Shown: positions 47,028-47,127, numbered from the stretch's first letter. The stretch is DNA of 52,710 bases from Octopus bimaculoides (GCF_001194135.2 NC_068982.1:110863305-110916014), one strand, 5' to 3'. The notes: generated from the letters alone by a model not told the origin. Program-made: numbers and translations.

Positions 47028-47127
47028 TAGGACGAACCTAGTTTGTTAGGCGCTAGGAGATCAAGTAACAGAAAATCAAGGAAATTCAAGATGGCTTCTA
47101 GATGCCTGACGAGCTAGGTTTGTTCTA
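47028..47127 (+). ncRNA. Candidate pri-miRNA-like or structured-RNA hairpin
   Basis: 47028-47059 pairs with 47095-47127: 25 Watson-Crick and 7 G-U pairs, one bulge (a47102), no mismatch, 35-nt loop. Confidence 0.4.

What the first reader, a model, noticed from the sequence alone, without database searches (positions are those of the whole stretch)
47028..47127. 32-bp strand-polarised RNA hairpin with pri-miRNA geometry: candidate novel microRNA locus
Seen: arm 47028-47059 (taggacgaacctagtttgttaggcgctaggag) pairs completely with 47095-47127, giving 25 Watson-Crick pairs, 7 G-U pairs, one bulged A and a 35-nt A-rich loop containing tcaag three times. All 7 arm differences give G-U on the + strand and none gives A-C; if the two outcomes were equally likely this is about 1 in 64 (two-sided). 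Established: Drosha substrates have a stem of about 33 bp (11 lower plus 22 upper), a basal UG at -14/-13 and a downstream CNNC, and coleoids have many lineage-specific miRNA families. Inference: a 5p start at 47039 leaves an 11-bp lower stem and places TG exactly at -14/-13 (47025-47026). The predicted products are 5p UAGUUUGUUAGGCGCUAGGAGA and 3p about UCUAGAUGCCUGACGAGCUAGG (47097-47118). CTAC at 47133-47136 is at +15, about 1 nt short of the usual window. I do not recognise the sequence as a known family. Alternatives: an ADAR-guiding duplex, a decayed MITE (3 of the 7 wobbles are CpG-to-TpG compatible), or a retro-copied A-to-G edited hairpin.
Basis: partly seen in the sequence, partly recalled or inferred. 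Interest (0 to 1): 0.75.

Follow-up and report, generated by a model that had tools for sequence, protein, structure and literature searches.

The report
One-strand RNA hairpin in octopus DNA
A 100-base stretch of octopus-like DNA folds into a long, fully paired hairpin only when read as RNA from one strand. This pattern suggests the RNA fold has been preserved, but whether it makes a microRNA could not be tested here.

Summary
The region 47028-47127 folds on the + strand into a 31-32 bp stem with 7 G-U pairs, no mismatch and one bulged A. Weak basal and apical extensions bring it to about 39 bp with 10 G-U pairs.

- The RNA fold energy is -51 kcal/mol (z = -6.4). The - strand does not form the hairpin, and as single-stranded DNA the fold is unremarkable.
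- It is the most stable and most strand-asymmetric non-microsatellite hairpin in the window.
- Local neutral spectra make 7/7 pair-preserving differences unlikely: 2e-4 to 9e-4.
- Tests for an ADAR imprint and for strand-specific cytosine deamination were both negative.

The microRNA reading stays untested because no small-RNA data, orthologue or genome-wide copy count could be reached. The stem geometry fits a pri-miRNA, but the motif evidence is weak. A mismatch-free stem with 22-26% G-U is atypical of canonical miRNAs. The sequence matches no Rfam family and no seed in the held parts of the published Octopus vulgaris tables.

My estimates:
- RNA-constrained small-RNA-type hairpin, about 0.35, of which canonical miRNA is about 0.15.
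- Inverted repeat polarised by chance, about 0.30.

Interest is moderate to low.

The parts
47023..47027 (+). Basal extension of the stem, 5' side. It pairs with 47127-47131 (U-G, C-G, U-G, G-C, U-A), and T47028 is bulged in the minimum-energy fold.
   Evidence: pair table
47028..47059 (+). 5' arm of the hairpin, 32 nt.
   Evidence: The arm is unique in the window at up to 3 mismatches.
47060..47094 (+). A-rich 35-nt apical loop with UCAAG three times. A 10-nt tandem duplication lies at 47071-47090. In the minimum-energy fold, 47061-63 pairs weakly with 47092-94.
   Evidence: p about 2e-4 for a four-base 5-mer occurring three times; TRF, period 10, 2 copies
47095..47127 (+). 3' arm of the hairpin, 33 nt, with a bulged A at 47102.
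47127..47131 (+). Basal extension of the stem, 3' side.
47039..47060 (+). This is inference only, with no read evidence.
   Evidence: Sequence confirmed. Its seed-match 8-mer ACAAACTA is a non-seed control k-mer in PMC9699675 Data S2.
47097..47118 (+). This is inference only.
   Evidence: Sequence confirmed. No seed-match 8-mer was found in the held supplements.

Best explanation
The locus encodes a hairpin that exists only in RNA made from the + strand. Its pairing has been kept by selection acting on that RNA. Changes that turn a Watson-Crick pair into G-U were tolerated, while changes giving A-C or transversion mismatches were removed.

A duplex of 31-39 bp with a large open loop is the kind of substrate that RNase III enzymes cut, so the most likely function is a small-RNA precursor. 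This would be either a lineage-restricted miRNA-like hairpin (Drosha then Dicer) or a short hairpin endo-siRNA source (Dicer alone).

Shown: the structure, its strand specificity, its RNA-not-DNA character, and its statistical excess over local neutral patterns. Inferred: transcription of the + strand, selection rather than chance, and any processing into small RNAs.

Within this explanation I give the specific canonical Drosha-dependent miRNA reading about 0.15.
For: - The + strand RNA fold is -51.2 kcal/mol with z = -6.4. The - strand gives z = -0.2 and no hairpin.
- As ssDNA the fold is only -14.1 kcal/mol with z = -0.9.
- It is the top hairpin by stability and by strand asymmetry among 4161 non-repetitive windows.
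- It has 7 of 7 (10 of 10 with the extensions) pair-preserving differences. A neighbouring control inverted repeat, 39697-39925, shows 7 G-U, 7 A-C and 12 transversions. SINE copies show a transition:transversion ratio of 30:16. The resulting probability is 2e-4 to 9e-4 for 7/7.
- Mutational explanations for the polarity failed their tests. The putative A-to-G sites have 5' G at 4/10 and 3' G at 1/10, which is the reverse of ADAR preference. There is no TC or CpG enrichment for C-to-T.
- The 3' flank has more C than G (GC skew -0.21). The private changes of the adjacent SINE copy are mostly G-to-A, not C-to-T.
- The stem and loop dimensions fit RNase III substrates, and the hairpin persists in a 401-nt fold.
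- The host is an octopod, a lineage with 90 novel miRNA families.
Against: - There is no evidence of transcription, small RNAs or conservation, because none could be obtained with these tools.
- If the scan covered thousands of windows, a 2e-4 to 9e-4 event is expected by chance somewhere.
- A G-U fraction of 22-26% with no mismatch or internal loop is unusual for conserved miRNAs. Selection on miRNAs does not normally demand perfect pairing.
- Motif support is weak: CNNC is one position off, and there is no apical UGU and no GHG.
- There is no match to any Rfam family or to the O. vulgaris seed lists held.
- The loop shows slippage-type tandem duplication, which is ordinary DNA turnover.
- With Watson-Crick-only scoring the repeat is not exceptional.
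- A 464-N assembly gap 250 bp upstream hides part of the context.
Confidence: 0.35

Rival explanations
1. This is a neutral, decaying inverted repeat: a remnant of a foldback element or MITE, or a local inverted duplication. Its 7-10 arm differences happen by chance to be all transitions of the type that gives G-U on the + strand. It has no RNA function.
For: - The window is dense in transposons and repeats, with no recognisable host exon.
- Decaying inverted repeats do occur, for example 39697-39925.
- The loop contains a slippage-type 10-nt duplication.
- The hairpin sits between a (TA)18 microsatellite and a SINE, in a block richer in GC than the background, like the repeats in this window.
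- TA dinucleotides flank 47030-47125, as a Tc1/mariner-type target duplication would.
- The number of windows scanned is unknown, so a roughly 5e-4 event may simply be a selected extreme.
Against: - The probability of the pattern under the locally measured spectrum is 2e-4 to 9e-4 for 7/7, and 4e-6 to 3e-5 if the three extension G-U pairs are counted.
- No second copy exists in the window or in 42 kb of other octopus DNA.
- The flanking TA dinucleotides are themselves part of the palindrome, and pairing continues beyond them.
Confidence: 0.3
2. The hairpin is a structural module of a longer + strand RNA and is not a small-RNA precursor. Candidates are a stem-loop of a transposable-element transcript inherited from a selected master copy, or a binding platform for a double-stranded-RNA-binding protein or ADAR in a long non-coding RNA or untranslated region.
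For: - The structural and polarity evidence is the same as for the best explanation.
- The GC-rich block 47023-47310 resembles repeat-derived sequence in this window.
- The repeated UCAAG motif in the loop is non-random and could be a protein-binding motif.
Against: - No other copy was seen in 93 kb.
- The 3' flank has no significant structure.
- No exon or known RNA family is nearby.
- A (TA)n tail on the left would suit a - strand retroposon, but the pairing holds only on the + strand.
Confidence: 0.15
3. This is the retro-copy of a transcript whose perfect hairpin was hyper-edited by ADAR (A to I, read as G) before reverse transcription. All G-U pairs would then be former A-U pairs.
For: The changes are confined to the double-stranded part, while the loop stays A-rich at 16 of 28. 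About a third of stem adenosines would have been converted. Cephalopods edit RNA heavily (PMC9699675).
Against: - The putative edited sites have G as 5' neighbour in 4 of 10 and G as 3' neighbour in 1 of 10. Unedited stem adenosines have U/A 5' in 8 of 14 and G 3' in 8 of 14. This is the reverse of the known ADAR preference (the preference itself is from my knowledge).
- No poly(A) tail, target-site duplication or parent copy was seen.
Confidence: 0.07
4. Strand-specific cytosine deamination (C to T on the + strand) acted on a perfect palindrome. The cause would be an APOBEC-like enzyme or prolonged single-strandedness.
For: All ten G-U pairs can be written as G-C to G-T. Three to four of them lie at CpG sites.
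Against: - There is no TC or CpG enrichment among the putative targets (p = 0.40 and 0.67).
- The + strand of the 3' flank has more C than G (47 against 31), and CpG is not depleted there (observed/expected 1.0).
- The adjacent SINE's private changes are 3 G-to-A, 1 C-to-T, 1 T-to-C and 1 transversion (G-to-T).
- A base-paired stem is a poor substrate for single-strand deaminases (my knowledge).
Confidence: 0.05

Closest known systems
Canonical bilaterian pri-miRNA hairpins, including the 90 novel octopus miRNA families of Zolotarov et al. 2022 (PMC9699675)
   Same: Both are a single hairpin on one strand with a stem of about 35 bp, single-stranded flanks and an open apical loop. The proposed register gives a 5' U on both predicted products. 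The host lineage is known to have gained many miRNAs.
   Different: - This stem has no mismatch or internal loop and 22-26% G-U pairs.
- The loop of 28-35 nt makes an 80-nt pre-miRNA, which is long.
- Only one of four processing motifs is in place.
- There is no read evidence, no conservation evidence, and no match to Rfam or to the held octopus seed lists.
Hairpin RNA (hpRNA) endo-siRNA loci of Drosophila (Okamura et al. 2008; Czech et al. 2008; from my knowledge)
   Same: Both are near-perfect, strand-specific inverted-repeat transcripts in which G-U pairs mark the transcribed strand. Such duplexes are long enough to be cut by Dicer without Drosha.
   Different: The Drosophila hairpins have arms of hundreds of bases and recognisable target genes. 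This stem could yield at most one or two duplexes, and no target is known. No such pathway has been described in cephalopods as far as I know.
Transposon-derived miRNA-like hairpins, such as the MADE1 MITE that gave rise to human miR-548 (Piriyapongsa and Jordan 2007; from my knowledge)
   Same: Both are short palindromic elements of about 80-100 bp that fold into a near-perfect hairpin when transcribed. This one has flanking TA dinucleotides and a repeat-rich neighbourhood.
   Different: MITE hairpins are multi-copy and fold equally on both strands until they decay without polarity. Here no second copy was found in 93 kb, and the decay is fully polarised.
ADAR- or APOBEC-edited retroelement copies (Knisbacher and Levanon 2016; from my knowledge)
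   Same: Both show a cluster of one-directional transitions on one strand.
   Different: The neighbour preferences do not fit ADAR. The flanks show no deamination skew. No retro-copy hallmarks are present.

Membership tests
Canonical animal miRNA gene (MirGeneDB-type criteria) | An imperfect hairpin with at least 16 complementary positions between the two arms | tested here: met
   31-32 contiguous pairs with one bulge. The hairpin is more perfect than is typical.
Canonical animal miRNA gene (MirGeneDB-type criteria) | Reads of about 22 nt from both arms, with 2-nt 3' overhangs (the Drosha and Dicer signature) | not testable with these tools
Canonical animal miRNA gene (MirGeneDB-type criteria) | Homogeneous 5' ends of the mature products | not testable with these tools
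   No read data are available.
Canonical animal miRNA gene (MirGeneDB-type criteria) | A stem of about 35 bp between a single-stranded basal junction and an apical loop of at least 10 nt | tested here: met
   The main stem is 31-32 bp, rising to 39 bp with the weak extensions. The loop is 28-35 nt.
Canonical animal miRNA gene (MirGeneDB-type criteria) | Processing motifs: basal UG, apical UGU/GUG, mismatched GHG, and CNNC at +16 to +18 | tested here: inconclusive
   UG is at -14/-13 only in the chosen register. CNNC is at +15. There is no UGU/GUG at 47059-47061, and no GHG mismatch because the stem is fully paired. Whether these motifs apply to cephalopods was not established here.
Canonical animal miRNA gene (MirGeneDB-type criteria) | Conservation of the arms, with a freer loop, in related species | not testable with these tools
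   All attempts to reach orthologues failed: DNA pattern scans, a protein-word search with flank peptides and exact ORF look-ups. The two Octopus loci fetched are not orthologous.
Canonical animal miRNA gene (MirGeneDB-type criteria) | Sequence or seed identity with a described family | tested here: not met
   There is no Rfam match at gathering threshold, or at E up to 10, other than noise. The sequence is absent from the supplements of PMC9699675 and from the full-text library. The 5p seed match ACAAACTA is a declared non-seed control, and other registers are absent. The held supplement files are truncated, and MirGeneDB itself could not be queried.
MITE or foldback DNA transposon | Many dispersed copies | tested here: inconclusive
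   No copy was found in the 52.7-kb window or in 42 kb of O. vulgaris, O. bimaculoides and Logan DNA. This sample excludes only very abundant families.
MITE or foldback DNA transposon | Target-site duplication flanking the terminal inverted repeats | tested here: inconclusive
   TA flanks 47030-47125 on both sides, but these bases are part of the palindrome. No 8-bp or TTA/TAA duplication is present.
MITE or foldback DNA transposon | Arms that decay without strand polarity | tested here: not met
   7/7 (10/10) differences give G-U on the + strand. The control repeat shows 7 G-U, 7 A-C and 12 transversions.
ADAR-hyperedited retro-copy | Edited sites follow ADAR neighbour preference (5' G depleted, 3' G enriched) | tested here: not met
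   The putative edited sites have 5' G at 4/10 and 3' G at 1/10. Unedited stem adenosines have 5' U/A at 8/14 and 3' G at 8/14.
ADAR-hyperedited retro-copy | Retro-copy hallmarks: a tail, a target-site duplication and a parent copy | tested here: inconclusive
   None was seen locally. A parent copy cannot be searched for without the genome.
Deaminase-hypermutated element | C-to-T skew and sequence context extending over the element and its flanks | tested here: not met
   The flank GC skew is -0.21 (C exceeds G), and no TC or CpG enrichment was found. The neighbouring SINE shows no such bias.
Hairpin endo-siRNA locus (hpRNA) | Dicer-dependent 21-nt reads and homology of the arms to a target gene | not testable with these tools
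   No read data and no genome or transcriptome are available to search. No complementary site exists elsewhere in the window at up to 3 mismatches.

The most novel reading that the evidence does not exclude
This is a previously unannotated, octopus-lineage small-RNA gene (miRNA or short hairpin siRNA). Its precursor is kept perfectly paired as RNA while its two DNA arms have diverged by about 22%. It would be a snapshot of how new cephalopod small-RNA genes arise from inverted repeats, and a case where G-U polarity alone reveals the transcribed strand and the selection on it.
Probability: 0.15. Interest if true: 0.5.

Novelty: new member of a known kind. Interest (0 to 1): 0.3.

Why it matters
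Coleoid cephalopods gained about 90 miRNA families, and the source of those loci is stated to be unknown (PMC9699675). A young, inverted-repeat-derived hairpin held together only at the RNA level would be a concrete example of such a birth.

The case also shows that G-U polarity, measured against a local neutral spectrum, can flag RNA-level constraint from a single genome. If small-RNA data show nothing, the locus is simply a rare polarised repeat remnant and of little further interest.

Tried and rejected
1. Known RNA family. Rfam found nothing at gathering threshold over the whole window, and only noise at E up to 10 around the locus. No tRNA was found.
2. Public DNA collections. The arm pattern gave two chance hits in metagenomes, inside a bacterial permease-like gene. 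It gave none in viral contigs and none in prokaryotic genomes.
3. Octopus contigs through called ORFs. A concatenate of peptides flanking the hairpin found nothing in 5.8 billion proteins. Twenty-three exact ORF look-ups failed. and most of 44 used GTG/TTG starts translated as V/L. All ten ORFs, including the two that start with ATG, were absent. Eight of them, with the ORFs, were repeated with an M start, also without result.
4. Orthology through the mariner fragment. The O. vulgaris and O. bimaculoides loci fetched share only repeats with the window, so they are not orthologous.
5. Literature. The hairpin sequence is in no held paper or supplement. The hits were a vertebrate cytochrome b primer. 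The SRR accession of the Logan contig could not be traced.
6. DNA-level function. As ssDNA the hairpin is unremarkable, so this was rejected.
7. A third arm copy or a larger repeat unit nearby. Nothing rose above the shuffled background.
8. A mirtron. The hairpin ends do not match splice sites (GTTAGG at the 5' end, no AG at the 3' end), so this was rejected.
9. A cluster of similar hairpins. There is none. The next most asymmetric fold, 21880-22010, is an ordinary G/U-rich sequence with z = -1.9.
10. CpG decay as the driver. The window's CpG observed/expected ratio is 0.81, and 1.0 at the locus, so there is little hypermutability to invoke.
11. My first two inverted-repeat finders missed the target because they scored Watson-Crick pairs only. 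This itself showed that the signal depends on the G-U pairs.

Full report
**Context**

The window is a draft eukaryotic scaffold of 52,710 bases. It has 16 runs of N (4,796 N in total), one of them (46308-46771) only 250 bp upstream of the finding. It is packed with microsatellites and transposon remnants, and no convincing host exon was seen among the open frames.

A mariner (Mos1-like) fragment at 34167-35063 is 93.5% identical in DNA to a copy on Octopus vulgaris chromosome OX597837.1. Several interspersed repeat families are shared at 75-84% with that locus and with an O. bimaculoides locus on CM046619.1. The O. bimaculoides locus has the same style of variable N gaps, including 10-N runs, as the window, while the O. 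vulgaris locus has none. The window is therefore octopod DNA, possibly O. bimaculoides.

**The observation**

On the + strand, the main stem has 31-32 pairs with 7 G-U, no mismatch and one bulged A (47102). The minimum-energy fold adds five basal pairs (47023-27 with 47127-31, two of them G-U) and three apical pairs (47061-63 with 47092-94, one G-U). The total is about 39 pairs with 10 G-U pairs and still no A-C or transversion mismatch.

| Form folded | Energy (kcal/mol) | z-score |
|---|---|---|
| + strand RNA, 136 nt | -51.2 | -6.4 (0 of 200 shuffles as stable) |
| - strand RNA | -27.3 | -0.2, hairpin not formed |
| + strand as ssDNA | -14.1 | -0.9 |

The feature is meaningful only as RNA. 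It persists when 401 nt are folded, and the 3' flank alone has no significant structure. In a census of 4,605 overlapping 110-nt windows folded on both strands, it is the most stable hairpin outside microsatellites and also the most strand-asymmetric.

**Is it more than chance?**

I measured local neutral spectra to extend this.
- A nearby inverted repeat (39697-39792 against 39830-39925) has 26 arm differences: 7 G-U on +, 7 A-C on + and 12 transversions.
- Three copies of a tRNA-derived SINE differ by 30 transitions and 16 transversions.

A random difference therefore gives G-U on a named strand with probability 0.27-0.33. Seven of seven on either strand has probability 2e-4 to 9e-4. Ten of ten has 4e-6 to 3e-5, although the extensions are partly ascertained by the folding itself.

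Two cautions apply. Scored by Watson-Crick pairs alone, the repeat (25/32 plus a gap) is below the 90th percentile of the best inverted-repeat score per 240-nt window. The whole signal therefore lies in the G-U pairs. I also do not know how many windows the scan has read. Over thousands of windows such an event is expected somewhere.

**What could make a one-strand hairpin?**

I tested three classes of cause.

1. A regional mutational bias on the + strand.
   - The 3' flank has C 47 against G 31.
   - The CpG observed/expected ratio is 1.0 at the locus and 0.81 in the window.
   - The private changes of the adjacent SINE copy are three G-to-A, one C-to-T, one T-to-C and one transversion (G-to-T).
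   - No such bias exists, and the putative C-to-T sites show no TC or CpG enrichment.
   - This would explain why the changes are confined to the stem while the loop remains A-rich.
   - However, the ten putative edited sites have G as 5' neighbour four times and G as 3' neighbour once.
   - The 14 unedited stem adenosines have U or A 5' eight times and G 3' eight times.
   - That is the reverse of the ADAR preference known from mammals and squid (my knowledge).
   - No retro-copy hallmarks are visible.
3. Selection on RNA pairing.
   - This predicts a mixture of A-to-G and C-to-T changes in arbitrary contexts and no other changes.
   - That is what is seen.

Selection and chance remain as the main contenders.

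**Is it a microRNA?**

The geometry fits. The 3p end at 47118 leaves a 2-nt overhang, and both predicted products begin with U.

The evidence is nonetheless thin.
- The register was free to choose.
- CNNC is at +15, outside the usual +16 to +18.
- There is no apical UGU/GUG.
- The fully paired stem cannot carry the mismatched GHG motif.
- The Dicer-end overhang is 3 nt in the stated register.
- Canonical miRNA precursors usually carry several mismatches and far fewer G-U pairs (my knowledge). Selection on them does not require perfect pairing, so the very feature that makes this hairpin striking is not specifically predicted by the miRNA hypothesis.

O. vulgaris has 164 annotated miRNA genes in 2.7 Gb after deep sequencing of 18 tissues (PMC9699675). 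That is about 0.003 genes per window of this size.

The locus matches no Rfam family. The sequence appears in no held paper or supplement. The 8-mer complementary to the proposed 5p seed, ACAAACTA, is listed in that paper's Data S2 as a non-seed control k-mer, described there as unrelated to any octopus miRNA site. Seed matches for eight other 5p registers (47035-47043) and nine 3p registers (47093-47101) were computed. Sixteen of the 18 register 8-mers were searched; all but ACAAACTA are absent from the held, truncated files. The 47035 and 47043 8-mers were not searched.

**Other anatomy**

The loop contains UCAAG three times, which has p of about 2e-4 for a four-base pentamer. It also contains a 10-nt tandem duplication at 47071-47090. 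The last loop unit, TTCAAGATGG, resembles the start of the 3' arm, TTCTAGATGC. The loop has therefore grown by slippage, which is ordinary in this microsatellite-prone genome, although a protein-binding motif is not excluded.

The hairpin lies directly after a (TA)18 tract (46982-47018) and 183 nt before a + strand SINE (47311-47682). The SINE has copies at 9298-9681 and 32138-32449, and their upstream flanks do not contain the hairpin. The block 47023-47310 has 44-52% GC against 35% for the window, like the repeats here. A transposon-derived origin of the sequence is therefore plausible.

A (TA)n tail on the left would suit a - strand retroposon, but the pairing holds only on the + strand. 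No second copy of the hairpin or its flanks exists in the window or in 42 kb of other octopus DNA. This excludes only very abundant families.

**What could not be done**

The collections at hand hold prokaryotic, viral and metagenomic DNA. Octopus genomes are reachable only around proteins returned by the protein search. Scans for the arms found only chance hits. Peptides flanking the hairpin found nothing, and exact ORF look-ups failed. The two Octopus loci obtained through the mariner fragment are paralogous, not orthologous. Expression, conservation and genomic copy number are the three decisive tests, and all remain open.

**Verdict**

My probabilities are:

| Explanation | Probability |
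|---|---|
| RNA hairpin kept paired by selection, most plausibly an RNase III substrate | about 0.35 (canonical miRNA about 0.15 within it) |
| Inverted repeat polarised by chance | about 0.30 |
| Structural module of a longer or transposon RNA | about 0.15 |
| ADAR-edited retro-copy | about 0.07 |
| Strand-specific deamination | about 0.05 |

If it is a small-RNA gene, it would be a new member of a known kind in a lineage already known for many such gains. Interest is moderate to low until small-RNA reads or orthologues are examined.

Noticed in passing
window 47311-47682 (+), 9298-9681 (+), 32138-32449 (-): Three copies of a tRNA-derived SINE of about 370-385 bp, 86-90% identical. Each has a tRNA-like head (GTGGAGGCGCAATGGCCCAGTGGTTAGGG...) that ARAGORN does not call as a tRNA. 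The copy at 47311 lacks a 13-nt segment that the others have, and the copy at 32449 runs into a gap.
   Followed up: partly
window 39697-39925: A 229-bp foldback with 96-nt arms 73% complementary and a 37-nt spacer. Its arm differences are unpolarised (7 G-U, 7 A-C, 12 transversions). I used it as a neutral control, and its identity is unknown.
   Followed up: partly
window 34167-35143: A Mos1/mariner transposase remnant (HTH_48 N-terminus and DDE C-terminus) interrupted by an assembly gap at 34442-34776. It is 93.5% identical in DNA to a copy on O. vulgaris OX597837.1. At protein level it is also 83-85% identical to Limulus polyphemus copies, which hints at horizontal spread of this mariner lineage.
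   Followed up: partly
window 16262-16468 and 16648-16854: Identical 207-nt segments (the same 69-aa frame) lie on either side of the N gap at 16507-16598. This is either a tandem duplication or an assembly artefact around the gap, inside a LINE-like region (15373-17427). Its ORF is 66% identical to a protein on Logan contig SRR11869390_4105451.
   Followed up: no
window 4383-4620, 8930-9062, 11208-11378; L004 14889-15806: A repeat of about 170-240 bp is dispersed in both orientations in the window. In the O. vulgaris locus it forms a head-to-tail array of at least five units with a period of about 172 bp. The same family is therefore interspersed in one place and satellite-like in another.
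   Followed up: no
window, all 16 N runs: Many of the assembly gaps abut microsatellites such as (TA)n, (CA)n and (CT)n, for example 1409, 3094, 12527, 25664/26073, 41172/41300, 43081 and 46307. The gaps thus mark unresolved simple repeats, and real distances in the window are uncertain.
   Followed up: no
window 23692-23961 (-), 27475-27807 (-) and 51508-51860 (+): Further transposon coding remnants: a GIY-YIG-like segment, a LINE reverse-transcriptase C-terminal segment, and a LINE 3' segment with a '...FIFWNRLS...' motif. They were identified by eye only.
   Followed up: no
window 47128-47165: The 38 nt after the hairpin hold five CpG sites. This is part of a block (47126-47300) with CpG observed/expected of 1.1-1.6, among the highest in the window outside recognised repeats. 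The block may be young repeat-derived sequence or an unmethylated patch.
   Followed up: partly
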